The position numbers and the translations under genes are program-made. A stretch of DNA of 64,000 nucleotides, taken from positions 62,001 to 126,000 of the IMG/VR virus record IMGVR_UViG_3300042391_000634; one strand, 5' to 3'. The notes beneath the pieces are model-generated. The model was not told where the DNA came from. It searched no databases and saw only the letters and a list, made by a program, of their open reading frames with translations. The first letter of the stretch is position 1. Each line of letters opens with the position of its first letter. Shown piece by piece: positions 21,830 to 50,230 of this stretch.

Positions 21830-23581
21830 ATGAACTTTATAAATTTTGATACAATATACGTTAATGGTTCTTCATTAACTGCAGGTGGTGGTTTATCCGA
21901 TTTTGGGGTTAAACAAGAATATAAAAAACAACATGGGGTTGAGTGGGTTAATGAAAAAGACGTAACATATCCAAAATATATTGCAGACCATTTTGGGGTT
22001 AAATTGGTTCATGATGCGTTTTCAGGTTCTGGAGCACCAAGATTGGTTAGAAGAACATACGAACATATACAAAAAATTGGTTTAGATAATGCAAGAAAAA
22101 CATTGTTTTTATTTGAAATAACGGACCCACCTCACAGAGTTGATTTATATGTGGAAAAGGTAAATGATTACGTTATAACCAATGTAAGATATGATGATGA
22201 TAGAAATATTGGTTCAATATCATCCATACAAATGCAAGACGTTTTAACAAAGGACGGCATAAAATATGACCACGATTACTTTAAAGGTCAAATATCGGAT
22301 GAAGTTAAAGATTACTTATCAAAATATCACAATCCTATAACATACTTTAATAAGTTTGTCGGTGAACTTGTTGGTTTATTTAGTTTTTTAGAAGAAAATA
22401 ATATTGAATATTTTTATTGGTTTGATAATGATTCACTACAAATGCCGTTTAAAGATTTTTATGTTGATTATGATAAAAGAAGAAACTTAAAATTTGGTGG
22501 GTTTAACTGTGTTAACCAATTCTGCACATTCCAAAATATGAGAATATGTGACGAATTAAACGGTGCAAGTGGTGATATGCATCCTGGTTATTTTGGTAAC
22601 AAAAACTTTGCGGAAAAGGTCATTAAAATGATTGAGGGTAAATTAAAACCGACCTTATATGTATTTGGGGATTCCCATACTCAAACATTTGAAAATCATT
22701 TTAAATCGGATTTATCATGGGCTAAACAATATGTAAATCATTTGGGTGAAACACCAAAAAATTATCCTGATTTAATTGCCGAACATTATAATATTGATGT
22801 TGTAAATTATGGTATGGGAGGATGTTCTAATTATACAATATTTGAGTCATTCATAAACAATCATAAAAATATAAAACCAAAAGATTTGGTTGTATTTGGT
22901 TGGACATCAATTAGTAGATTTAGAGTTGCTAATAACGTTAATGACCTTGTCGACATTATTCCGTTTACACCACATCCAAAACAAAATGACGATGTTGAAA
23001 AGAAAACTACGGAACAAATAGCCTACAATAAAGAAACACATTCAGTTTGGTGGACCGAAATTGAAAATTTTGTAAAGATTATTAATCATACATTAAAAAA
23101 TAATAAAGTATTACATTGGACATGGGTTAAACCAGAAAACATTTTACCAACAAGAATATGGTCTCAAGAAAGTATTGATTTAAAACATTCATATATCTTC
23201 AATAATTGGAACGAGTCAGAACCAAAAGTTCAAGAATTAATGAGAAAAAATTGTGATTATTTAGTTAATCTTACTGAAAATATAGATTTAAATGAATTAA
23301 AAACATTTGCGGAAAATGATAAAAGAATAATTTTTTATAACATTGAATTATGTAATGAGGAAAAAAGACAATTTGTTTTTCATAATTTTAAAATAAAACA
23401 TTACCAATCAAGAAACTTTAAAAAAGATTGTTATCAACATTTCATTCCATATAAAAAATATCAAAGCATACTTGAAGAAACCAATGGTGCCGTTGATGAT
23501 CTACACATTGGTAGATTTGGACACGTAGAACTATCGAAAGATTTAATTAAAGAATTTGAAATGAAAAAACCCATCAATTAG
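21830..23581 (+). CDS. Tandem SGNH/GDSL-like domain protein
   Basis: Block I motifs NGSSLTAG and FGDSHTQ, and block V DMHP and DLHI. Start at MNFINF (21830), 11 nt after TATTTATA. Confidence 0.65.
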   Translation: MNFINFDTIYVNGSSLTAGGGLSDFGVKQEYKKQHGVEWVNEKDVTYPKYIADHFGVKLVHDAFSGSGAPRLVRRTYEHIQKIGLDNARKTLFLFEITDPPHRVDLYVEKVNDYVITNVRYDDDRNIGSISSIQMQDVLTKDGIKYDHDYFKGQISDEVKDYLSKYHNPITYFNKFVGELVGLFSFLEENNIEYFYWFDNDSLQMPFKDFYVDYDKRRNLKFGGFNCVNQFCTFQNMRICDELNGASGDMHPGYFGNKNFAEKVIKMIEGKLKPTLYVFGDSHTQTFENHFKSDLSWAKQYVNHLGETPKNYPDLIAEHYNIDVVNYGMGGCSNYTIFESFINNHKNIKPKDLVVFGWTSISRFRVANNVNDLVDIIPFTPHPKQNDDVEKKTTEQIAYNKETHSVWWTEIENFVKIINHTLKNNKVLHWTWVKPENILPTRIWSQESIDLKHSYIFNNWNESEPKVQELMRKNCDYLVNLTENIDLNELKTFAENDKRIIFYNIELCNEEKRQFVFHNFKIKHYQSRNFKKDCYQHFIPYKKYQSILEETNGAVDDLHIGRFGHVELSKDLIKEFEMKKPIN

Positions 23582-24239
23582 ATGGGTTTTTATTTATTCT
23601 ACCTAATTTCCATCCTGTTGGTATTATCCCCATCATTTTTATTTTTTTATTTTTAATACCATTATTAATCCATTGAGAACCATATTGTGAATTTGATTCG
23701 CCAATACCTTGTCCTTTTTTTGATGATTTTATTTTCTCAATTGTTTCAGGTTTATGTTTTTTACCTTCCCAAGAATAATATTCTTGTATTGGTTTCATTT
23801 CACCCATTTGATATCTTTTTTTATTTGATTCAGATATTTGTGTAGAACGTTTTTTTCGATATTCTTCATCTGTTTTTAATCTTTCACTATGTTTTAACCC
23901 AGCAGCTTGGGAACATTTAAATTGATGTTTTTGATTGTTAAACCCACCTGAACCACCAGGTTTCATATTATAACAATTAACATCGTAAACATATTCTTCG
24001 GTGACAATTTCCTTTTCTCTTTGAATTAAAATTTCTCTATTTTTACACCATTCAATTATTTCAATTTTAAAATTTTCTTCACCATATTTTCTAATCGCAT
24101 ATCTTAAACTTTTACCACTACCTAAATAACCATCTTTTAAATTACTTGTTGAATGCATACCAATATAAAACTTATTGTTAAGTAAATTGGTTGTTTTATA
24201 AATGAAGTGGTATTTTTTTAACTTAATTGAGTTCGACAT
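23574..24239 (-). mobile_element. Free-standing GIY-YIG homing endonuclease (Seg-like) with NUMOD3-like repeats
   Basis: FIYKTTNLLNNKFYIG...YLGSG...E...YN and WEGKKHKPETIEKI. Lies immediately downstream of the tmRNA. Confidence 0.9.
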
Positions 24240-24262: not shown

Positions 24263-24274
24263 AAAAAAGTCGAG

Positions 24275-24679
24275 GGTGGAGACGAGGGGAGTCGAACCCC
24301 TGTCCGATCCGCCGTACCATAAATGGACTACACGTTTATTCAATTAGTTCACAATTGACAAATATTTGGTTCCTATTTTGACATCGTAACCAATAACTGT
24401 GTCGAGTTCACTTTAAGGTAGCCCTCTGAACGAGACCTTTGACACATTTTAAGTGGTATCATCACTGTGGGGACTTCTGTTCCTAGGTTATATGTCCTTC
24501 GACCCGAGTGTAGTTTCGCCTTAGGCTACTGCTACAGTAGAAGTTGCGATTAAACCGCAAGCTTCCATGTTTGTATAAACGTTGTCGTTTAAATTTTACC
24601 ACCATAGATTTAAGTCATAGATGACATCTGACTACGTGCCCATTTACCATACCAACGCCCGTCAATTCCAGGCGTCCCC
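24275..24679 (-). ncRNA. ssrA: tmRNA
   Basis: 5' GGGGACGCCTGGAATTGAC pairs with 3' GGTTCGACTCCCCTCGTCTCCACC, including the G3.U70 alanine identity pair. Internal tag ORF AAC GAC AAC...GTA GCC TAA at 24589-24521. Confidence 0.95.
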
Positions 24680-24688
24680 ATTTATAAT

Positions 24689-24720
24689 CAAATATAGATA
24701 AAAAAGGGTTAAAAAACTAA
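24689..24720 (-). promoter_or_regulatory. Bacteroidota-type promoter for the tmRNA
   Basis: TTAG-N20-TATATTTG, 9 nt upstream of the mature 5' end. Confidence 0.6.
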
Positions 24721-24755
24721 TTTTAACCCTGAATAACATATATGTTAGAAAAAAA

Positions 24756-24953
24756 TTACTTAGTAGTAGTTTTCTTAGCTTTTGGAGCTTTGTCAGTTAC
24801 TTTTTTAACTTTAGCTTTAACTTCAGCCACTTTCTCTTTAACAACTGCAACTTCAGCAACAACCTCAGTTTCTAATTGTTGTAATTCAACCGCTTTTTCA
24901 GCCATTGTTCCAGCACCTAAAATTTTCTTAATTAAATCAATAATTTTTTTCAT
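24756..24953 (-). CDS. 65-aa protein with a Lys/Ala-rich basic tail
   Basis: ...VKAKVKKVTDKAPKAKKTTTK. TATTTATA 14 nt upstream. Confidence 0.7.
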   Translation of the reverse strand: MKKIIDLIKKILGAGTMAEKAVELQQLETEVVAEVAVVKEKVAEVKAKVKKVTDKAPKAKKTTTK

Positions 24954-24996: not shown

Positions 24997-25677
24997 TCAA
25001 GAGGTCAATGGGAGAGATTTTTCATATAACGCCTCAAAAAACAACTTGTTCTTTTCCCATTTTTTATTGGTCATACCTACAGATTTATGGGTAACCCCAA
25101 ATCTTGTTGTTAAACCAATCTTAACCCCATCCAAAAAGTTTTCAACACAGAAGGAAATATCGTAGAAATGAAACCCTTCAAACTGTTCGTTAAATTCCTT
25201 CTTTATACGTCCTTTATGAACCGCAAAGAATAAACCATCCACTATTACCACATCCTTAAGAACGTCGTTAAATACCCCCTTAGAATAGTGATTTACATGT
25301 CTTTTACCCTCATGAAGATGACCAACCACACCAAACATATTCTCACGGTTTTGCCACCACATTCCACTTGTTAATTTATCGGTTCCAGCAATACCGATAA
25401 TTCCATATTCAGGATGTTTATCAAATAACTTAACAATCTTTGGTGTCATGTTTGGTGTTTCCAAAATAAGGTCATCATGCATGAAAACAATGATGTCATT
25501 AACACTTTCTTTTAACCCTTTGTTATAGACTTGTGTTAATGACATTTCACCGTCATTTTCATAAACAAGTATTTCTGTTTTGGGATGTGAAAACATACGT
25601 TCAACATGTTTAACATATTCATCATCAATTTTTCTTGTGGATATCACCACACTTATTGGTTCATTATTCTTCGACAT
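24997..25677 (-). CDS. GT2-like glycosyltransferase
   Basis: YNKGLKESVNDIIVFMHDDL and FHFYDISFC. Start set at MSKNN. Confidence 0.8.
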   Translation of the reverse strand: MSKNNEPISVVISTRKIDDEYVKHVERMFSHPKTEILVYENDGEMSLTQVYNKGLKESVNDIIVFMHDDLILETPNMTPKIVKLFDKHPEYGIIGIAGTDKLTSGMWWQNRENMFGVVGHLHEGKRHVNHYSKGVFNDVLKDVVIVDGLFFAVHKGRIKKEFNEQFEGFHFYDISFCVENFLDGVKIGLTTRFGVTHKSVGMTNKKWEKNKLFFEALYEKSLPLTS

Positions 25678-26413
25678 AAAGTACTTGTATTTTACCGTTG
25701 ATTTCAATTAAGTCAACAACGATCGGTTTATTAATTGGTCTATAATTGGCTGTACATATTGAGGCATTTACAAATAAAGTTTTTTTACCATATTCAATAC
25801 CGTAACCTTCATGAATATGACCAAATACGTTTACCAATGGATTAATTAAACCAATTCTATTTATCAAACATTCACATCCAACATTTGTATTTGGTTGTCT
25901 CCAATTGTTTACTAAATCTCTATACCCGTTTGGTGGACCGTGTGTAATTAACACATCGGTGTCTTCAGGAATCATATTCCATTTTTCCTGTAATTCAATT
26001 CCTAATCTTGGTAAATTAAATGCCCAATCGTAAAATTCTGGTTGCCAAGGACTACCGTAAAATTTAATAGGTCTTGAGAACTCAGGAGTTTCAATTGTTA
26101 TAAAACTATCTTCTAAATAAGTCACATCGGACTGTGATAAATTCTCAGGGGACATTAAATGATGTAACCAATCGTAATCACCTTTATGATGTGGTTGATT
26201 AACCTTTTCAAAACAAAAATCATGATTACCTGATATAAATATTTTTTCGTCCCATCCACCTAAGTTTTGGAACCAATGAATAAAATCAGTAACGTCTTTT
26301 TCGCCACCTTTGTTTGAGATGTCGCCTGCATGAATTAACACATCACCTTTTGGTAAAGGATGTTCCATCTGATGATGAAGGCTGTGGGTGTCGGATATTA
26401 ATACTAATCTCAT
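25664..26413 (-). CDS. Metallophosphoesterase (calcineurin-like, MPPED2-type)
   Basis: ISDTH, HAGD, SGNHD, ITHGPP and FGHIHE. Start at MRLVL, directly after TATATTTG. Confidence 0.92.
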   Translation of the reverse strand: MRLVLISDTHSLHHQMEHPLPKGDVLIHAGDISNKGGEKDVTDFIHWFQNLGGWDEKIFISGNHDFCFEKVNQPHHKGDYDWLHHLMSPENLSQSDVTYLEDSFITIETPEFSRPIKFYGSPWQPEFYDWAFNLPRLGIELQEKWNMIPEDTDVLITHGPPNGYRDLVNNWRQPNTNVGCECLINRIGLINPLVNVFGHIHEGYGIEYGKKTLFVNASICTANYRPINKPIVVDLIEINGKIQVLYVEE

Positions 26414-26474: not shown

Positions 26475-27400
26475 AATAGGGCCTTAGGTTTTCATAGAGA
26501 ACAAGGTCATTTACCACCACTTTGTTTTTCTAAACAAAGAAAATAAAACTCTGAGAATACAAGTTTTAACAACCGACTTAGGAACATTATTTGTTTCTTT
26601 CCTTTTCCACGAACTTTTGATTCGTACCGATCAATGACGGTCAATTAGATTAACCAATCCTAAAGTCATCAGATACTCTTTTATTACTTATTACTCAACA
26701 AATCTGCCGACCTGTTTCAACCTTGCGGGTTTAGAGAACTTTCTTAAAAATCATATTGGGATTGAGTCCCTTTATGGCCGTGAACCTCTCACGACTAAGT
26801 AGTCACCTGTCTCCAATGACTGACGAACACTTTTTCAGTTTAATTATGATTTTTATATCGTAATAAAAATTTAGTTTCCGAATTAGGAAAGTAGTGGTTC
26901 GTCACCTAGCCAAGTTATCTTTTGAACAACTCGATACTAAACTACTCTCTGAAGTGTCCCCACCTCCATATTTTTGGTTTCCTTCGAAATTAAACCCTTG
27001 GTAGGATTTAGTCAAGGACACTAACAGCACCACCTGTTTTTTGTCATACCTTCCATCTTACGACGCTACGGTTTTAAGACCACCATTGTATTGAATCACG
27101 CAATTGTATAATCGGATAACTATACTTCTCACAAACTAATTCTATGGATTATTCTTATTGGTGTTCCCACCTCAACCAAACAACTCGGATTGCTTGGTCA
27201 TCTAACCATTTCGCTACGGAGTTACCCTCACTACTTCAGGTCAAATGATATTCCACTTGTCTACTCGAGATCCATTACTGAATCCGCAACTTACCCCAAC
27301 CAAGGGTTTGTCACTTTATCCCACTTTCATGGTTTATTTTATTGACTATAGACGGCCAATATTTTTATTCAAAGAACTTTATCTTTTGGGTTATTCACCC
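26448..27400 (-). ncRNA. Large (~900-950 nt) structured non-coding RNA, GOLLD-like candidate
   Basis: No credible ORF, GC above flanks, many hairpins (AACC-CGCAA-GGTT, GGGA-CTCAA-TCCC, GAGTTGTTC-AAAA-GATAACTT), own promoter and terminator, next to tRNAs. Family identity rests on size, context and recollection only. Confidence 0.65.
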
Positions 27401-28414: not shown

Positions 28415-28452
28415 GATAATAATATACGAAAAATATTCCAATAAACAAAATG

Positions 28453-28524
28453 TATTCTCGACGGGATTCGAACCCGTATTACCTCCGTGAAAGGGAGGTG
28501 ACCTAACCCTTAGTCGACAAGAAC
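28453..28524 (-). tRNA. tRNA-Glu(TTC)
   Basis: Cloverleaf; CCTCC-CT TTC AC-GGAGG anticodon arm; GGTTCGAATCC T arm; CCA not encoded. Confidence 0.93.
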
Positions 28525-28766
28525 AAATAATCACTCAAATGGGTATTTGTTATAATATCACAATTGTTGCGCTATACTCTGGTTAATTACTCCGTCTGTA
28601 TCCAACAGCTTTATGTTGGCTTATAATTGGCTACTTTATTATAACTCACATTTTTATTTGTGATTAAAAATCCTCGTCTTTCCGAGGTGCCAAACAACCT
28701 TAGTCTCAATCTACTCTTCCGATTGTTAATCGTGTAGTGGATCCTCCCCATTAGACTTTTGGTTCG

Positions 28767-28853
28767 CGGAAGCGCAGGGATTCAAACCCCGGTTACAGTT
28801 TCCCGTAAAGCAGTTTTCAAGACTGCCGCATTCGATCGCTCTGCCACGCTTCC
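28767..28853 (-). tRNA. tRNA-Ser(TGA)
   Basis: GGAAGCG/CGCTTCC acceptor, GCAGT-CT TGA AA-ACTGC, long variable arm, T loop TTTGAAT. Confidence 0.92.
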
Positions 28854-28856
28854 ATT

Positions 28857-29045
28857 GACACCTTTATTTATCCAACTCACAGGTGTCTTAGCTGTCCCCT
28901 TTCGGGTTAGGAATAGACCATTGGGTTACTATATTTACCCCTTATAGTAGACGGTCAATCTAAATAGAACCTTGTCCTATCATCAGTTCCATATGGTCGT
29001 CAAACCACTTCTCTTCATATTGGACATACTATTCGGTGACTAACC
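28857..29045 (-). ncRNA. Candidate structured RNA between tRNA-CAT and tRNA-Ser
   Basis: GGTTAG/CTAACC and GAATAG/CTATTC close a ~140-nt multibranch; extra CCC-GAAA-GGG and GACACCT/AGGTGTC hairpins. Confidence 0.45.
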
Positions 29046-29053
29046 GAACCGTG

Positions 29054-29126
29054 TGGACCCGGAGGGGTATGATCCCCCGACCTCGACATTATGAGTGTCT
29101 TGCTCTACCAGCTGAGCTACAAGTCC
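29054..29126 (-). tRNA. tRNA with CAT anticodon (Ile2 or elongator Met)
   Basis: GGACTTG/CGGGTCC acceptor (G1-C72, so not initiator), GACA-CT CAT AA-TGTC, atypical T loop ATCATAC. Confidence 0.88.
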
Positions 29127-29129
29127 TAT

Positions 29130-29516
29130 TAGTCTTTTCCTTACCTCTTAATAATCACATTGCCATCCCGGTGTTACTGCCGGGTGCTTACCACTTGCGT
29201 GGAGTGATTATCACATTAATGTTTGATTCCAATCCAACTTAAATTGCACCATCCGATTCATTGATCTGGTTGACAAAGTCCTCGATTGGATTAGTCTCAA
29301 AAAGTTACAGGTTTTTTGTACCATCTATGTACATCATGACCGAAGTTTGGTTGGATTTACATCACGTCTCAGCAAACTTTACTCGGTGGTTACATTTTCG
29401 TATTGGGGTAATTATTCCCGACTTATAGTAACTCTACCCTCACCGCCCTACCTCGCGAGTCAGACGGATCTTTTGGGATTCATAGACAGTGGGGTTACAC
29501 CACCGTCGTCACCTGT
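29130..29516 (-). ncRNA. Candidate ~385-nt structured RNA between tRNA-Thr and tRNA-CAT
   Basis: ACAGGT/ACCTGT closes a 210-nt domain with GACGGTGG/CCACTGTC and AAGTTTG/CAAACTT stems. A 3' three-way junction has ATAATCAC/GTGATTAT, CCAC-GCAA-GTGG and CCCGG/CCGGG. Confidence 0.55.
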
Positions 29517-29518
29517 TG

Positions 29519-29590
29519 AGCCTCCACTCGGAATCGAACCAAGTTATCATGATTACAAGTCATGTGCATCGCCATCAATGCTTTAGAGGC
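29519..29590 (-). tRNA. tRNA-Thr(TGT)
   Basis: GCCTCTA/TGGAGGC acceptor, CATGA-CT TGT AA-TCATG, GGTTCGATTCC. Confidence 0.93.
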
Positions 29591-45035: not shown

Positions 45036-45515
45036 TTATTTTTTACTACGGTCCCATTTAGCCTTTCTTAACTCAGGGGATATTAAATGACTCTCATCTA
45101 TTGTATGTTCAATTTTAACGTTTATACAGGTTTGGGGTAAACTACAATTTTTTAAATAATTGTTAATATATCCCATCATATTAGCACTACCAATAGGGTT
45201 TGCCGAATGAATATAAACCTGGGGTAAAGGTATTTTTTCATTCATACTTTCAGCAACCAAATACCTACAACAATCCATACCAGTTTTTTCTTCTATGTTG
45301 TTATAATCCAACATATAATTATTTTTTACATTTGTATAATATTCTATCATGGCACCTTCACCTAAATCATGATCTAAAGATATTACATCAAAATTACCTA
45401 AACTATGTAATTTAATTGCAGCCACAAATTCATCGTAATTACGGGCAATAACCCAATCCTCAGCATTAGGGGTTCTAACGTCATCGAGATATAATCTCTT
45501 TTTTTCAATTTTCAT
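45036..45515 (-). CDS. Cyclic-phosphate-processing receiver-like domain protein
   Basis: LYLDDVRTP, SLDHDLG, TGMDC..YL and HSANPIG; adjacent to the RNA ligase. Confidence 0.75.
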   Translation of the reverse strand: MKIEKKRLYLDDVRTPNAEDWVIARNYDEFVAAIKLHSLGNFDVISLDHDLGEGAMIEYYTNVKNNYMLDYNNIEEKTGMDCCRYLVAESMNEKIPLPQVYIHSANPIGSANMMGYINNYLKNCSLPQTCINVKIEHTIDESHLISPELRKAKWDRSKK

Positions 45516-46575
45516 CTTTCTTAAAAGGTTTTTCGTATTTAGGTTTCATTATTCTCCATATAATATGTTCATATGGTTTTCCGTCCCACATGGCAAACAT
45601 AATTGGTCTATAATAAGATTCTACATCACATTTTTCTAAATGTAATGCAAAGTCTTTTTTTGATGGTGTAACTTCTTTATCGTTATATTTTCCATATTTA
45701 AAATAGTCCACAACCTTACCACAATGATTTGATATATTATACATACCATATTCAAAAGAACTTACTTGTTGTTTAACCCATTTATAAAATTCATCGGGAA
45801 CCCTATCTAAAAATTCATCCATAGGTTTTCCTTCTTTCATTAATTCCCAAATATCTTTTGATGAAAAATTTGTTAAAATTTTGTGAAGACGTTTATATTC
45901 TTCTCCTTTGATTTTCATACGAAAACCATTCTTAAATTTAATTACATATCCCTCTCTATCTTTACTAATTTCTTCTTTAAGTAAGTCGTATCCTTCACCC
46001 CATGTTTTATATGTTGTTACAACCTCAAAGCCCGAGTCTTGTGTCCAAAATAAACTACTATCAGGTATTTCTTCACCTGTTTCAGTATGAATCGCACCAA
46101 GAACAACTAATTTTTCTTCACCTTTATAATCAACAACAATTCTATTTTCAGGATAAATAATTTCAAATAAATATGTATTGTCTTTTCTCCATGCACTGAT
46201 GTCATGTCTATCAAGAATTTCTTTTCCTTTAATTGATTGTGGTGATGTGAAGGATCCGCGTGTAGCCATTATCCATTCATTTTCATAATTAAAAAGAATA
46301 CCTAAAGATCCATCCATCTTTTCATAGACAACGTAATTTTCATTAGGAATATCTTCTGGTTTATGTTCTTCGTAATTAAAAAATTTCTTAAATGGTCTTG
46401 CAACAATATCACCTTTTGAATTGGTAACTAATCCACGGCATTGTAAAGTAATATCATCCCACAATCTTTCGTATTGAACTTTAGGAGAATAATTCCATAT
46501 AGTCAAATCTTTAGTAGGATGTGTTTGTTTATGTAACAAACCATCATTATGATATTTCTCTAAAATTTCTAACAT
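45505..46575 (-). CDS. T4 Rnl1-type RNA ligase
   Basis: YEKMDGSLG (motif I), FEII (III), EGYVIKF (IV), KIK (V). Start at MLEIL, coupled to the upstream stop. Confidence 0.9.
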   Translation of the reverse strand: MLEILEKYHNDGLLHKQTHPTKDLTIWNYSPKVQYERLWDDITLQCRGLVTNSKGDIVARPFKKFFNYEEHKPEDIPNENYVVYEKMDGSLGILFNYENEWIMATRGSFTSPQSIKGKEILDRHDISAWRKDNTYLFEIIYPENRIVVDYKGEEKLVVLGAIHTETGEEIPDSSLFWTQDSGFEVVTTYKTWGEGYDLLKEEISKDREGYVIKFKNGFRMKIKGEEYKRLHKILTNFSSKDIWELMKEGKPMDEFLDRVPDEFYKWVKQQVSSFEYGMYNISNHCGKVVDYFKYGKYNDKEVTPSKKDFALHLEKCDVESYYRPIMFAMWDGKPYEHIIWRIMKPKYEKPFKKDEN

Positions 46576-46817
46576 TAGTTTATTATTTTGTGGAATCCGA
46601 TGTTGTATGTATATTTTAACCAATTAAAGGACAAATATATCCCACATATTTTGTTTTTCCAAATTGATACATGAGAATCTGGTTGACATGTTTCAAAATA
46701 AAAATAAACAAAAGGTAATGGATATAATGACCATTGGTTTCTAAGTAAGTTAGCGTGAAATTTCATCTTTGGTTTTGGATTTATGGACTCAATAAAAGAA
46801 ACAATAAATTGACTCAT
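46575..46817 (-). CDS. Hypothetical protein
   Basis: 80-aa aromatic-rich ORF filling the gap between kinase and ligase with abutting ends. Confidence 0.6.
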   Translation of the reverse strand: MSQFIVSFIESINPKPKMKFHANLLRNQWSLYPLPFVYFYFETCQPDSHVSIWKNKICGIYLSFNWLKYTYNIGFHKIIN

Positions 46818-47246
46818 CTATAACTTTATTTCAAACCTATTCTTCATTTGTTGGAGTTTATTTTCAGGCACTCCGTGAATATTTTGATTTCCGTGTCTAT
46901 TTTCAACAATTACCGTATGAACTCTATAATTGTATCTTTCTGCCATTTTAAAATATTCATCCATTTCCCATTCTTGGGTAAATGTGTTTGCCACAACAAT
47001 ACGTGCAATTTCTTGTCTCATTCTTTCTGAACATCTAAATTGACAATAATTATGAGCTTCTTTTATTTTGGAACCATCAAAAATATAATCACCATTATCA
47101 TCCACAAAAAAATCATCAGCTGATAAAACTTCTTGCGGATTATTATTTGGTTGTTGTAAAATGATATTAGCTAATGTTGATTTCCCTGAACCGGAAACAC
47201 CCCTTAAAAGTATTAAGTCACCTTTTATTTCGTTTACATTATCCAT
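46818..47246 (-). CDS. P-loop polynucleotide kinase-like protein (AAA_33)
   Basis: LLRGVSGSGKST, LSADDFF, VANTF, NIHGVP. Confidence 0.85.
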   Translation of the reverse strand: MDNVNEIKGDLILLRGVSGSGKSTLANIILQQPNNNPQEVLSADDFFVDDNGDYIFDGSKIKEAHNYCQFRCSERMRQEIARIVVANTFTQEWEMDEYFKMAERYNYRVHTVIVENRHGNQNIHGVPENKLQQMKNRFEIKL

Positions 47247-47704: not shown

Positions 47705-49717
47705 TTATTTTTTAGAAATTAATAATTTTTCGTCTTTATATTTCAAAATGTATTGTTCATTTTCTAAAATATTACCTTTTAATATTTCTTCACTTAAAAA
47801 ATCTTCACAAAGATTTTGTATAATACGTTTTAGTGGACGAGCACCATACTCTTCTTGTGAATTTAATTCGTAAATTCTATTAGTAACTGTTTTATCAAAA
47901 TTAATTTTATAATTTTTATCGGTTAATCTTTTATTTAATCTACCAACTTCAATATTAATAATTTTCTTTAATGTTTCATCATTTAAAGAGTTAAATAAAA
48001 TAACATCATCAACACGATTTAAAAACTCTGGATTGAATTGTTGTTTTAGTGCTTTTTGAATCATTGTTTTTCTAACCTCATATTGTTGTTCTTCACTTGA
48101 TGATGTTTTAAACCCAACACCCCCACCTAATTCAGATACTTTCTTAGCACCAACATTTGATGTCATGATAATAATCGTATTTGTGAAATTAATTTTTCTA
48201 CCGAATGAATCTGTTAAATGACCTTCATCTAAAATTTGAAGTAGAATATTAAAAACATCTTTATGAGCCTTCTCAATTTCATCGAATAAAATCACAGAGA
48301 ATGGGTTATTTTTAACTTTCTCAGTCAACTGACCTCCTTCATCATAACCAACATAACCAGGAGGAGAACCGATTAATTTTGATACATTATGTTTTTCCAT
48401 ATACTCACTCATATCCACACGAATAATTTTATCGGAGTCACCAAATAAAACCTCAGCAATTGATTTTGCTAAAAATGTTTTACCAACTCCCGTTGACCCT
48501 ATGAATATAAATGAACCAATTGGTTTATTCGTTTCTTTAATACCAACACGATTTCTTCTAATTGATTTTGAGATTGTTTTAATTGCCTCATCTTGACCTA
48601 TTACTTTTGCTGATAATATATCCTCAAGTTGTAATAACTTTTTAGTCTCTTTAGTATCGAGTTTAGTAATTGGAACTCCTGTCATATCTGTAACAATGTT
48701 ATATACATCATCTAAAGTAACTGGAGTTTTATTATCCTTTTGTTTGTTTGACCATTTTAATTTTTCATCGTCTAACTTAGTTGTTACTTTTTTCTCCTCA
48801 TCACGTAGTTTTGCCGCTTGTTCGTAATTTTGACTTTTAACAACTTGAACTTTTCTTTCTTTAATATTGTCAATTTCTTTTTTTAATTTTTCAATCGACT
48901 CAGGAATTTTAGATGAAACTCTTTTTTCGGAACCCAATTCATCTAATACATCGATTGCTTTATCTGGAAATTGTCTATCTGTAATGTAACGACCTGAAAG
49001 TTTAACAATTGTTTCTAATACACCTTCCTCATAACTTACTTTATGAAAGTCTTGATATGATGTGGTTAAGTTTTTAAGAATTTCTAAAGTTTCTTCTTCT
49101 GTTGGTTCATTCAATATTATTTTTTGAAAACGACGAACTAAAGCTGCATCTTTTTCAATATGTTTTTTAAACTCGTCAAAAGTTGTTGCTCCAATACATT
49201 GTAATTCCCCTCTTGCTAATGCTGGTTTTAAAATATTGGCGGCGTCCATGGCACCACTTGCATTACCAGCACCAACCATAGTATGTAATTCATCAATGAA
49301 GATGATTACATTAGGTGCCTCTTGTAATTCATTAATGATTGCTTTAATTCTCTCTTCAAATTGACCACGATACTTTGTGCCGGCAACTAATGAGGTTAAA
49401 TCTAACGACATAATACGTTTGTCAATAAGATTGGGAGGACAATCACCTTTGTAAATCATTAACGCTAATTTTTCAACTAACGCAGATTTACCAACTCCCG
49501 CTTCTCCAACAATAACGGCGTTGTTTTTCTTTTTACGAGAAAGAATTTGTGCAATTCTTTTTACCTCCTTGTCTCTACCGACAACGGGATCAATTTTACC
49601 TTCTTCGGCCATCTTAATAAGATCACGAGAGAAGTTATCTAAAATTGGTGTGTTAGAACCCTTTCTAACTTTTTTTGGGTTTGTGGTTGGACCATCTTCA
49701 AAAAAATCTACTGACAT
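47705..49717 (-). CDS. clpC: ClpC-type Hsp100 AAA+ chaperone lacking the N-terminal domain
   Basis: Two AAA modules (GEAGVGKS, GSTGVGKT), short UVR M-domain NYEQAAKLRD, VGF ClpP-docking loop; only ~22 aa precede LDNFSRDL. Confidence 0.9.
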   Translation of the reverse strand: MSVDFFEDGPTTNPKKVRKGSNTPILDNFSRDLIKMAEEGKIDPVVGRDKEVKRIAQILSRKKKNNAVIVGEAGVGKSALVEKLALMIYKGDCPPNLIDKRIMSLDLTSLVAGTKYRGQFEERIKAIINELQEAPNVIIFIDELHTMVGAGNASGAMDAANILKPALARGELQCIGATTFDEFKKHIEKDAALVRRFQKIILNEPTEEETLEILKNLTTSYQDFHKVSYEEGVLETIVKLSGRYITDRQFPDKAIDVLDELGSEKRVSSKIPESIEKLKKEIDNIKERKVQVVKSQNYEQAAKLRDEEKKVTTKLDDEKLKWSNKQKDNKTPVTLDDVYNIVTDMTGVPITKLDTKETKKLLQLEDILSAKVIGQDEAIKTISKSIRRNRVGIKETNKPIGSFIFIGSTGVGKTFLAKSIAEVLFGDSDKIIRVDMSEYMEKHNVSKLIGSPPGYVGYDEGGQLTEKVKNNPFSVILFDEIEKAHKDVFNILLQILDEGHLTDSFGRKINFTNTIIIMTSNVGAKKVSELGGGVGFKTSSSEEQQYEVRKTMIQKALKQQFNPEFLNRVDDVILFNSLNDETLKKIINIEVGRLNKRLTDKNYKINFDKTVTNRIYELNSQEEYGARPLKRIIQNLCEDFLSEEILKGNILENEQYILKYKDEKLLISKK

Positions 49718-49776: not shown

Positions 49777-49818
49777 GACAAATTGTCAAAAAGTTTTTAA
49801 TTATTATGACAAGTTGTC
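49777..49818. promoter_or_regulatory. Two GACAA-N-TTGTC palindromes, candidate operator
   Basis: 49777-87 and 49808-18, 31 bp apart, between divergent clpC and hsp20. Confidence 0.5.
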
Positions 49819-49873
49819 CAAATGTATTCGTTGGCAAATTTTTTGTTTATATGAAGGTATAAAACAATATAAT

Positions 49874-50230
49874 ATGATAACATTATTTAAAGACCCATTT
49901 TTTAGAGGATTGGATACGAAGGGATTTCTATCTACTCCTGAAACTAACATCGAAAAAGATGAATTAGGATACACGGTATCCATAAGTGTACCTGGATTAA
50001 CAAAGGACAACTTAAAAATTTTAACCAAAGAAGGTGTATTAAAAATTACCTATCAAAAAGAAGAGAGTGATAATACACATCATTTTATTGGAAGTTTTGT
50101 GAAATCCTATAATATTCCAGAAGATGTTAAAGAAAAAGATATCGAAGGAAAAGTTGAAAATGGAGTTCTAACTCTCTCATTACCAATTGATAAGAAGAAA
50201 AGTTTGGAGAGATTGATTTCATTAAATTAA
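49874..50230 (+). CDS. Small heat-shock protein (Hsp20)
   Basis: SVPGLTKDNLKI, FVKSYNIPEDV, GKVENGVLTLSLP. Start at MITLF. Confidence 0.93.
   Translation: MITLFKDPFFRGLDTKGFLSTPETNIEKDELGYTVSISVPGLTKDNLKILTKEGVLKITYQKEESDNTHHFIGSFVKSYNIPEDVKEKDIEGKVENGVLTLSLPIDKKKSLERLISLN

What the first reader, a model, noticed from the sequence alone, without database searches (positions are those of the whole stretch)
24521..24592. Phage tmRNA encodes an unusually long, non-LAA tag
Seen: an in-frame TAA at 24598-96 bounds the tag ORF, which reads (L)NDNVYTNMEACGLIATSTVAVA-stop (22-23 aa) and ends AVA, with internal Met and Cys. Established: bacterial tags are usually about 10 aa ending in LAA/ALAA, read by ClpXP/ClpAP. 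Inference: the tag may redirect rescued peptides to a different protease (for example the phage ClpC), weaken degradation, or compete with host tmRNA.
Basis: partly seen in the sequence, partly recalled or inferred. Interest (0 to 1): 0.65.

Follow-up and report, generated by a model that had tools for sequence, protein, structure and literature searches.

The report
Jumbo-phage tmRNA with long tag
A 336-kb phage carries its own complete ribosome-rescue RNA (tmRNA), and its degradation tag is 21 residues long, twice the length of tags in its likely Bacteroidota hosts, and is conserved across a large family of related phages; long, odd-ending tags were already known in other phage tmRNAs, so this is a solid but not surprising find.

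Summary
Window 24274-24679 (-) is a full-length tmRNA (Rfam 91.4 bits, gathering score 47).

The tag most likely starts at GAC (24586-24584), not at the upstream Leu/Asn codons, and encodes DNVYTNMEACGLIATSTVAVA, with the stop at 24523-24521.

In 45 distinct homologous tmRNAs from related phage contigs, most of them large:
- this frame is open for 20-21 codons in all 45;
- the first base is always G and position -4 is always A, the E. coli A86 equivalent;
- third codon positions vary most;
- the 20- and 21-residue forms differ by one in-frame codon;
- conservation collapses right after the stop.

ARAGORN calls only the last 8 residues here.

59 Bacteroidota tmRNAs were surveyed. 58 have 9-10-residue tags ending AA, mostly LAA or MAA; one ARAGORN call is clearly wrong.

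The phage has no SmpB, ClpX or Lon. It does encode ClpP, a ClpC-like unfoldase with a VGF loop, and Hsp20.

Routing of the tag to the phage Clp system remains untested. Tags ending in VA or VAA are compatible with ClpXP. Long non-LAA tags already exist in mycobacteriophage Bxz1 (25 aa) and Bacillus phage G (13 aa).

Verdict: a new member of a known kind, of moderate interest.

The parts
24274..24679 (-). Complete one-piece tmRNA gene (about 405 nt)
   Evidence: Rfam RF00023 91.4 bits, model positions 1-374. ARAGORN gives 24275-24679. The acceptor stem has an invariant G3.U pair, and the acceptor, T-stem and PK1 helices show compensatory changes in relatives.
24521..24586 (-). Tag reading frame: resume codon GAC 24586-24584, 21 codons (DNVYTNMEACGLIATSTVAVA), stop TAA 24523-24521
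   Evidence: The frame is open in 45/45 homologues. G at the first base is invariant. Entropy by codon position is 0.44/0.42/0.74. The 20- and 21-residue forms differ by an in-frame GTA codon. Conservation drops sharply after the stop.
24587..24597 (-). 11-nt single-stranded spacer between PK1 and the resume codon (AAAAUUUAAAC), with the invariant A at -4 (24590), the equivalent of E. coli A86
   Evidence: A90 of the tmRNA is invariant in 45/45. Flavobacteriaceae tmRNAs have the same context, UUUAAAC|GGC. A86 sets the frame in E. coli (PMC2481249).
24596..24598 (-).
   Evidence: Sequence. It is replaced by AGA in L004 and its group.
24598..24633 (-). Pseudoknot 1 (helices AGUCA/UGACU and GUCAUC/GGUGGU)
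   Evidence: Rfam alignment. Pairs 56-61/78-83 show both-sides changes in 4 of 10 sequences. This is the most conserved part of the RNA, with mean entropy 0.36.
24540..24565 (-). Hairpin inside the tag frame (GAAG-C-UUGCG / CGCAA-CUUC; loop contains an out-of-frame UAA). It is probably the helix-5 equivalent, and the frame reads through it.
   Evidence: Rfam aligns it to helix 5. It appears in the single-sequence fold and the family consensus fold. The out-of-frame UAA can be present in at most 9 of 45 relatives.
24689..24696 (-). TATATTTG, a match to the Bacteroidota-type -7 promoter motif TAnnTTTG, 10-17 nt upstream of the mature 5' end
   Evidence: Present in the window. A TAnnTTTG motif starts 17-29 nt upstream of the tmRNA in 43 of 45 distinct relatives; the exceptions are L005 (none) and L075 (at -58). 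That this motif marks Bacteroidota promoters is from my own knowledge.
24701..24730 (-). Terminator-like hairpin plus T-run ending the upstream small ORF (24756-24953), which insulates the tmRNA transcription unit
   Evidence: Sequence. The same GGGTTAAAA...TTTTAACCC hairpin is conserved upstream of the tmRNA in most relatives.
47705..49717 (-). ClpC-like double AAA+ unfoldase (670 aa) with a short UVR middle domain and a GGGVGFKT loop; no Clp_N domain
   Evidence: Pfam AAA, AAA_lid_9, UVR, AAA_2, ClpB_D2-small. PHROG 4871 ATP-dependent protease, E 4e-243. VGF is seen in the translation. Present in 10/10 related large records. Its partner ClpP lies outside the window at genome 212668-213195.

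Best explanation
This is a working, phage-encoded, canonical one-piece tmRNA.

Proposed mechanism:
1. It is transcribed from its own Bacteroidota-type promoter and trimmed. Its 3' CCA is completed by host enzymes, because the gene reads ACCC.
2. Host AlaRS charges it with Ala through the G3.U pair. It is bound by host SmpB, since the phage has none.
3. It enters stalled ribosomes. Translation resumes at GAC (24586-24584), four bases after the invariant A.
4. This adds Ala plus DNVYTNMEACGLIATSTVAVA and terminates at UAA (24523-24521), freeing the ribosome.
5. The tag peptide itself is under selection. Its small-hydrophobic, Ala-terminal end ([V/A]-x-[V/A]-A-COOH) most likely serves as an ssrA-type C-terminal degron for Clp-family proteases. 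These could be host ClpXP, and possibly the phage's own ClpC-like/ClpP.
6. The conserved extra N-terminal half (xNVYxxME.) would be a second recognition determinant.

Shown here: the gene, its structural elements, the reading frame, its conservation, the contrast with Bacteroidota tags, and the phage's protease gene set.

Inferred: charging, SmpB use, tagging, and which protease reads the tag.
For: - Full-length Rfam and ARAGORN hits.
- Invariant G3.U pair; compensatory pairs in the acceptor, T-stem and PK1.
- 45 distinct homologues from more than 100 phage contigs all keep a 20-21-codon frame starting with G (GGC 32, GAC 9, GCA 2, GGA 2) with A at -4.
- Third-position entropy is 0.74 against 0.44/0.42 for positions 1 and 2. 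The other frames are closed.
- pN/pS is 0.57. Entropy is 0.52 in the tag frame and 1.5 just after the stop.
- The 20- and 21-residue forms differ by an in-frame codon indel.
- Flavobacteriaceae tmRNAs have the same resume context (UUUAAAC|GGC) and the same resume position, nt 95-97.
- A conserved TAnnTTTG lies upstream.
- The phage lacks SmpB, ClpX and Lon but has ClpP, a ClpC-like protein and Hsp20.
- ClpP is found in 9/10 and the ClpC-like protein in 10/10 large relatives.
- The last residue is Ala in 45/45. Endings are VAVA 20, KVAA 18, VVA/VVAA 6, VEVA 1.
Against:
- pN/pS of 0.57 on a 54-nt block is only modest purifying selection, and RNA structure within the frame confounds it.
- The host is inferred, not shown. 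One relative's contig sits in a Flavobacterium MAG but another sits in a Terrimicrobiaceae MAG.
- The family profile shows no similarity to any bacterial tmRNA outside the tRNA-like domain.
- Nothing links the tag to a particular protease.
Confidence: 0.7

Rival explanations
1. The tag is an orthogonal, phage-specific degron. Its length and non-LAA end make it invisible to host ClpXP and route rescued peptides to the phage's own ClpC-like/ClpP machine.
For: - The phage encodes ClpP and a ClpC-like unfoldase with a VGF ClpP-docking loop, and these are conserved in relatives.
- The tag has a conserved extra half that is absent from host-type tags.
- There is a precedent for a long tag read by a different protease: the Mesoplasma tag and Lon (PMC9382460).
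- Independent phage lineages also have long non-LAA tags.
Against: - 18 of 45 family members end in VAA, a common bacterial ending. From my own knowledge, the Caulobacter tag ends AVAA and is a ClpXP substrate.
- VA-ending variants of the E. coli tag (LVA) are standard degradation tags (PMC9382460).
- One 75%-complete relative (G349) has no ClpP hit and a ClpC-like gene interrupted by two TGA codons, yet keeps the tmRNA.
- No binding or degradation test was possible.
Confidence: 0.25
2. The tag is short. Translation resumes at GCA (24547-24545), giving ATSTVAVA, as ARAGORN calls it.
For: ARAGORN output for the window and several relatives. GCA is the commonest resume codon in bacteria (own knowledge).
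Against: - That GCA lies 39 nt downstream of the canonical position, inside a hairpin, and has no U-A context at -5/-4.
- It is ACA in L017/L097, and its first base is A in 3 of 45.
- The 13 codons upstream show coding-type conservation and are never interrupted by a stop.
- ARAGORN itself calls the long tag from nt 95 in many relatives.
Confidence: 0.04
3. The real frame is +1. It would begin after the UAA at 24591-24589, read TTTFIQTWKLAV, and stop at the UAA in the hairpin loop, as in typical tmRNAs whose stop sits in the helix-5 loop.
For: Rfam aligns the hairpin loop UUAA to the consensus stop position. ARAGORN picked this frame in L017.
Against: - The loop UAA needs A at tmRNA positions 129 and 130. 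Only 9 of 45 have A at 130.
- The upstream UAA is absent in L005, L008 and L017.
- Variability in this frame peaks at codon position 2.
- ACG as a resume codon breaks the invariant-G rule seen in this family.
Confidence: 0.02
4. The RNA mainly supplies ribosome-rescue capacity, or titrates host SmpB away from the host tmRNA. The long tag would be a by-product of losing the ancestral stop, with no role in proteolysis.
For: - Ribosome release, not tag-directed degradation, is the essential activity of trans-translation (PMC8012679).
- The phage has no SmpB, so it must share the host's.
- The frame reads through a helix-5-like hairpin whose loop still holds an out-of-frame UAA in the window.
Against: - The tag frame is one of the best conserved parts of the RNA.
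- It keeps an invariant Ala terminus, Met7 and Gly11, conservative I/L/V exchanges, and in-frame indels across 45 variants.
- A neutral read-through would decay.
Confidence: 0.1

Closest known systems
Mycobacteriophage Bxz1-group tmRNA (phage-encoded ssrA; listed in PMC4131195)
   Same: - Full-length tmRNA carried by a large lytic phage next to a tRNA cluster.
- ARAGORN tag of 25 aa, ATDTDATVTDAEIEAFFAEEAAALV. From my own knowledge this is about twice the host tag length, and it does not end in LAA.
   Different: - Unrelated phage lineage and host phylum (Actinomycetota).
- No sequence similarity; BLAST against 50,697 phage records gave no match.
- The tag is acidic, not neutral-hydrophobic.
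- The Rfam score is lower (73.9 bits).
Bacillus phage G tmRNA
   Same: A jumbo phage (497 kb) with a tmRNA beside tRNAs. The tag ends in QVA rather than LAA.
   Different: Shorter RNA (about 310 nt) and a 13-aa tag. Firmicute host.
Flavobacteriaceae / Bacteroidota chromosomal tmRNA
   Same: - Same overall size (390-402 nt).
- Same resume position (nt 95-97) and resume context UUUAAAC|GGC.
- Most of the phage family also uses GGC, so Gly is the first tag residue.
- The 5' arm reads UUGAC in both.
   Different: - The tag is 9 aa, G[ED]xNYA[LM]AA, against 20-21 aa in the phage family.
- There is no detectable similarity outside the tRNA-like domain.
Mollicute (Mesoplasma florum) ssrA tag read by Lon
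   Same: A tag much longer than the E. coli one, with a non-LAA end, adapted to a protease other than ClpXP (PMC9382460). It offers a functional analogy for a lengthened tag.
   Different: It is cellular, not viral. The phage encodes no Lon. Adaptation to another protease is not shown here.
tmRNA and SmpB genes of huge phages (Al-Shayeb et al. 2020, PMC7162821)
   Same: Metagenomic phages over 200 kb that carry tmRNA among many translation genes. 2 of 10 relatives of this phage also carry SmpB.
   Different: In the passages that mention tmRNA, that paper reports presence only, from ARAGORN, and does not analyse tags. This family is not described there, as far as I could search.

Membership tests
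tmRNA (Rfam RF00023, one-piece ssrA RNA) | Covariance-model match above the curated threshold over the whole model | tested here: met
   91.4 bits against a gathering score of 47; model positions 1-374. The same locus was found in the whole-genome search.
tmRNA (Rfam RF00023, one-piece ssrA RNA) | tRNA-like domain: 7-bp acceptor stem with a G3.U pair (the AlaRS identity element), T-arm, and a 3' discriminator A plus CCA | tested here: met
   G3.U is invariant in 10/10. Compensatory changes occur at pair 6:406 and in the T-stem. The CCA is only partly encoded in the window (ACCC) and in several relatives, so it must be repaired by a host enzyme; no PolyA_pol family gene is present in the phage.
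tmRNA (Rfam RF00023, one-piece ssrA RNA) | Pseudoknot 1 followed by a short A/U-rich spacer and a resume codon, with a conserved A four bases upstream | tested here: met
   PK1 at 24598-24633. 11-nt spacer. A at -4 and G at +1 are invariant in 45/45. The role of A86 is described in PMC2481249.
tmRNA (Rfam RF00023, one-piece ssrA RNA) | Short open frame ending in a stop and encoding a tag with a nonpolar C-terminus | tested here: met
   21 codons plus TAA. Conserved as a coding frame. The C-terminus is VAVA.
tmRNA (Rfam RF00023, one-piece ssrA RNA) | Partner protein SmpB available | tested here: inconclusive
   No SmpB in this phage. SmpB is present in 2 of 10 large relatives. Host SmpB is presumed; binding cannot be tested here.
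tmRNA (Rfam RF00023, one-piece ssrA RNA) | Alanylation and trans-translation activity | not testable with these tools
   Needs biochemistry or proteomics.
Canonical ClpXP-type ssrA degron (C-terminal LAA-COOH) | Tag ends in L-A-A | tested here: not met
   The window tag ends V-A-V-A. None of the 45 family tags ends in LAA. The terminal Ala and a small hydrophobic penultimate residue are kept.
ClpC-type Hsp100 unfoldase (for the 670-aa protein at 47705-49717) | Two AAA+ modules, a short middle (UVR) domain, a ClpP-docking loop, and an N-terminal Clp_N repeat domain | tested here: inconclusive
   AAA, AAA_lid_9, UVR, AAA_2 and ClpB_D2-small all hit. A VGF tripeptide is present. No Clp_N hit, and the protein is about 140 aa shorter than ClpC (length of ClpC from my own knowledge). 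So it is ClpC-like, not a full member.

The most novel reading that the evidence does not exclude
Large phages have repeatedly evolved tmRNAs whose tags are about twice the host length and avoid the host's LAA ending. Examples are this family, Bxz1 and, in part, phage G. The reason could be that the tag is a bipartite, phage-private degron. It would be read by a phage-encoded unfoldase/ClpP pair, here the N-domain-less ClpC-like protein. The phage would then take over the fate of every rescued nascent chain during infection while borrowing host SmpB.
Probability: 0.15. Interest if true: 0.7.

Novelty: new member of a known kind. Interest (0 to 1): 0.4.

Why it matters
**Annotation.** The work fixes the resume codon and tag of a widespread phage tmRNA family that had not been analysed, as far as I could search. 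The family covers more than 100 IMG/VR contigs and genomes up to about 335 kb. ARAGORN, the standard caller, truncates the tag to 8 residues in roughly half of the members, so pipeline annotations of these phages are wrong.

**Biology.** The phage carries the rescue RNA plus ClpP, a ClpC-like unfoldase and Hsp20, but no SmpB. This gives a clean natural system to ask whether phages re-route trans-translation products.

**Tools.** If the tag proves orthogonal to host ClpXP, it would also be a new degron/protease pair for Bacteroidota genetics.

As it stands, this is a well-supported but ordinary extension of known phage tmRNAs.

Tried and rejected
- **BLAST against GenBank phages.** The tmRNA gave no match against 50,697 records, so no cultured relative is available.
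- **Sequencing runs.** No expression or RNA-end evidence could be obtained, and read laying was not used.
- **Donor lineage.**
  - An nhmmer profile of the 45 phage tmRNAs was run against 30 Flavobacteriaceae and 30 other bacterial tmRNAs. It matched only the tRNA-like ends.
  - BLAST against 301 Bacteroidota genomes matched only the last 30 nt, except for one mis-binned phage contig.
  - The donor is therefore unresolved.
- **TAnnTTTG enrichment.** The motif is not enriched in the window as a whole: 91 matches against 109 expected. It is only about 2-fold enriched upstream of ORFs genome-wide. Only its conserved position upstream of the tmRNA carries weight.
- **RNAalifold on the whole RNA.** It cannot draw pseudoknots. 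It proposes an invariant, unsupported long-range pairing between the tag start and the 3' P2 strand, which I disregard.
- **Rejected readings.**
  - The +1 frame and the short ARAGORN tag: see the rival explanations.
  - An attP-type 3' fragment of a host ssrA gene: the gene is full length, has its own promoter motif, and differs from host tmRNAs.
  - A bacterial contig: the record is an IMG/VR virus with CheckV completeness 100%, and a relative has direct terminal repeats.
- **Not run.**
  - Complex prediction was not used, because the 22-residue tag is below the tool's 30-residue chain size.
  - The large protein searches were not needed.
  - No alternative genetic code was used.

Full report
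**1. What is at the coordinates**

- The window is bases 62001-126000 of a 335,630-bp IMG/VR virus record that CheckV rates 100% complete. The genome has 31.2% G+C.
- ARAGORN finds a tmRNA at 24275-24679 on the minus strand. Rfam RF00023 matches 24274-24679 end to end at 91.4 bits, against a gathering score of 47.
- ARAGORN reports only the last eight residues, ATSTVAVA, starting at a GCA at 24547.

**2. Which frame, and where does it start?**

*Finding relatives.* The glycosyltransferase next door (24997-25707) was used as bait and gave 16 related phage loci. Ten of them hold a homologous tmRNA. Two DNA-pattern scans of viral contigs raised the set to more than 100 loci. These gave 73 tmRNAs, 45 of them distinct.

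*Evidence for the frame.*
The other two frames carry stops in 44 and 42 of 45.
- Mean column entropy by codon position is 0.44 / 0.42 / 0.74.
- Many differences are synonymous: TAT/TAC, TGC/TGT, GTA/GTG, GCA/GCT, GCC/GCT.
- The 20- and 21-residue forms differ by one in-frame GTA codon.
- pN/pS is 0.57.
- Conservation falls from 0.52 bits of entropy inside the frame to 1.5 just after the stop.

*Evidence for the start.*
- The first base of the frame (tmRNA nt 94) is G in 45/45. The codon is GGC in 32, GAC in 9, GCA in 2 and GGA in 2.
- The base four positions upstream (nt 90, window 24590) is A in 45/45.
- This matches E. coli, where the nearly universal A86 lies four bases before resume codon G90 and sets the frame (PMC2481249).
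- The family's commonest context, UUUAGAC|GGC, mirrors E. coli UAGUC|GCA.
- The spacer after pseudoknot 1 is 11 nt, as I count it in E. coli from the primer sequence quoted.
- Flavobacteriaceae tmRNAs have UUUAAAC|GGC at nt 95-97, the same context and position.

*Conclusion.* The tag starts at GAC. The encoded tag is DNVYTNMEACGLIATSTVAVA, 21 residues, preceded by the Ala that the tmRNA carries. The upstream TAA sits in the 3' strand of PK1 and is not conserved.

**3. Rejected readings**

- *The +1 frame.* It is superficially attractive. It starts after a UAA, reads TTTFIQTWKLAV, and stops at a UAA in the loop of a hairpin that Rfam aligns to helix 5. ARAGORN chose it in L017. But that loop UAA can exist in at most 9 of 45 members, and the upstream UAA is missing in several.
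- *The short ARAGORN tag.* It starts at a codon that is ACA in some members, and it ignores 13 conserved, never-interrupted upstream codons.

**4. Is the RNA otherwise intact?**

- The acceptor stem has the G3.U pair in all ten aligned sequences.
- Compensatory changes occur in the acceptor stem (6:406), the T-stem (389:403) and PK1 (56:83).
- The 3' end reads ACCC in the window, and several relatives also lack an encoded CCA. The phage has no CCA-adding enzyme family hit, so a host enzyme must finish it.
- A TAnnTTTG motif starts 17-29 nt upstream of the mature 5' end in 43 of 45 distinct members. L005 has none and L075 has one only at -58. In the window the motif is at 24689-24696.
- The motif follows a conserved terminator-like hairpin that closes the preceding small ORF.

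**5. Host**

Evidence pointing to Bacteroidota, probably Flavobacteriales:
- Shine-Dalgarno-like 4-mers precede only 12 of 275 ORFs, fewer than in an internal control (21 of 275).
- The conserved TAnnTTTG motif. That this is the Bacteroidota -7 promoter motif is from my own knowledge.
- The shared resume context with Flavobacteriaceae.
- One relative's 7.4-kb contig, 85% identical in the tmRNA, is binned into a Flavobacterium MAG. That MAG also has its own ordinary tmRNA with tag GEGNYALAA.

Evidence that weakens this:
- A more divergent member sits on a 1.6-kb contig in a Terrimicrobiaceae MAG.
- The family profile detects no bacterial tmRNA outside the tRNA-like domain.

The host assignment is therefore an inference.

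**6. How unusual is the tag?**

- *Against likely hosts it is unusual.* Of 30 Flavobacteriaceae tmRNAs, 28 are called with a 9-residue tag of the form G[ED]xNYA[LM]AA. The other two are likely ARAGORN miscalls; one is the same tag called one codion late in my reading, i.e. one codon late. All 29 tmRNAs from a phylum-wide sample have 9-10 residues ending in AA.
- *Against the wider record it is not unusual.* Bxz1 has a 25-residue tag ending ALV, and phage G has 13 residues ending QVA. Among bacteria picked up by chance, a Parcubacteria MAG has a 19-residue tag ending MAVA and a Clostridia MAG has 23 residues.
- *Within the phage family.* The endings are VAVA (20), KVAA (18), VVA or VVAA (6) and VEVA (1). 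The last residue is always Ala.
- The window's Asp start and its Cys belong to a small subgroup. The family consensus is GNVYNNME[VI]AG[LI]LATS followed by KVAA or NVAVA.

**7. Protease context**

- The phage lacks SmpB, ClpX and Lon.
- It encodes ClpP at genome 212668-213195.
- It encodes a 670-residue ClpC-like protein at window 47705-49717. This has two AAA+ modules, a UVR middle domain, a VGF loop and no Clp_N domain.
- An Hsp20 gene lies next to it.
- Among ten large relatives, ClpP is present in 9, the ClpC-like gene in 10 and SmpB in 2.
- The Flavobacterium MAG has ClpX and Lon.
- Either protease route is therefore available. Nothing here discriminates between them.
- Ala-terminal tags with V at the penultimate position are established degradation-tag variants in E. 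coli (LVA; PMC9382460). I therefore rate an ordinary Clp-type degron as more likely than a strictly private one. The conserved extra half of the tag still needs an explanation.

**8. Verdict**

- Phage tmRNAs are known (PMC4131195; PMC7162821), and so are long non-LAA phage tags. This is a new, large and well-defined member family rather than a new kind of system.
- Its practical value is a corrected annotation and a testable tag/protease question.

**9.

- Only table 11 was used.
- No broken toxin or animal-virus sequence was involved.
- The costly protein searches were not used.

Noticed in passing
window 26548-26949 (-): A full-length GOLLD RNA (Rfam RF02032, 290 bits, model positions 1-416) lies 1.9 kb upstream of the tmRNA, between it and a tRNA cluster. 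tmRNA, GOLLD and the tRNAs are all on the same strand.
   Followed up: no
window 28452-29590 (-); relatives L004-L017: There is a cluster of tRNA genes (Glu-UUC, Ser-UGA, Met-CAU, Thr-UGU). Relatives carry 4-10 tRNAs at the same place with varying content, so the set turns over quickly.
   Followed up: partly
window 23574-24239 (-): A GIY-YIG (SegE-like) homing endonuclease gene lies directly downstream of the tmRNA (Pfam; PHROG 314, E 4e-40). Most relatives have a plain hairpin terminator right after the CCA. The window, L005, L011 and L069 share a different 3' flank. This suggests a mobile insertion that also removed the encoded terminal A of the CCA.
   Followed up: partly
window 45505-46623 (-) and 46818-47246 (-): A T4 Rnl1-type RNA ligase (PF09511, E 1e-19) lies next to a small AAA_33 kinase-like protein (E 1e-14). 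Together they look like an RNA (tRNA) repair pair, just downstream of the ClpC-like gene.
   Followed up: no
window 49814-50230 (+): An Hsp20/alpha-crystallin small heat-shock protein is divergently placed next to the ClpC-like unfoldase. With ClpP elsewhere in the genome, the phage carries a small proteostasis kit.
   Followed up: partly
relatives G345 (C1:1118-1519) and G346 (C1:297777-298169): Two of ten large relatives encode their own SmpB (138 bits), while the window's phage and the others do not. SmpB carriage is patchy within one phage family.
   Followed up: no
G349:C1:95767-96269: In one relative the ClpC-like gene is split, with two in-frame TGA codons, and no ClpP was found (record about 75% complete). 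This could be a pseudogene, an assembly error or recoding; it was not examined.
   Followed up: no
L151 (Flavobacterium sp. MAG, 7.4-kb contig) and L142 (Terrimicrobiaceae MAG, 1.6-kb contig): Phage-type tmRNAs sit on short contigs binned into bacterial MAGs of the species-representative genome set. The Flavobacterium MAG therefore appears to have two tmRNAs. This is probably phage contamination of the bins, and only weak host evidence.
   Followed up: partly
phage tmRNA family: ARAGORN reports the full 20-21-residue tag for some members, only the last 8 residues (ATS[NT]VAVA) for others, and once the wrong frame. Automated annotations of this family are inconsistent.
   Followed up: yes
L075, L090, L094, L033, L084, L142: A divergent subgroup has tags such as GNTFAKMATLGLTREASVVAA and GKTISKLSTLGLIREESVVAA. 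Length, Gly start, Met, the G-L core and the Ala end are kept, but the rest is replaced. This may mark a different host range.
   Followed up: no
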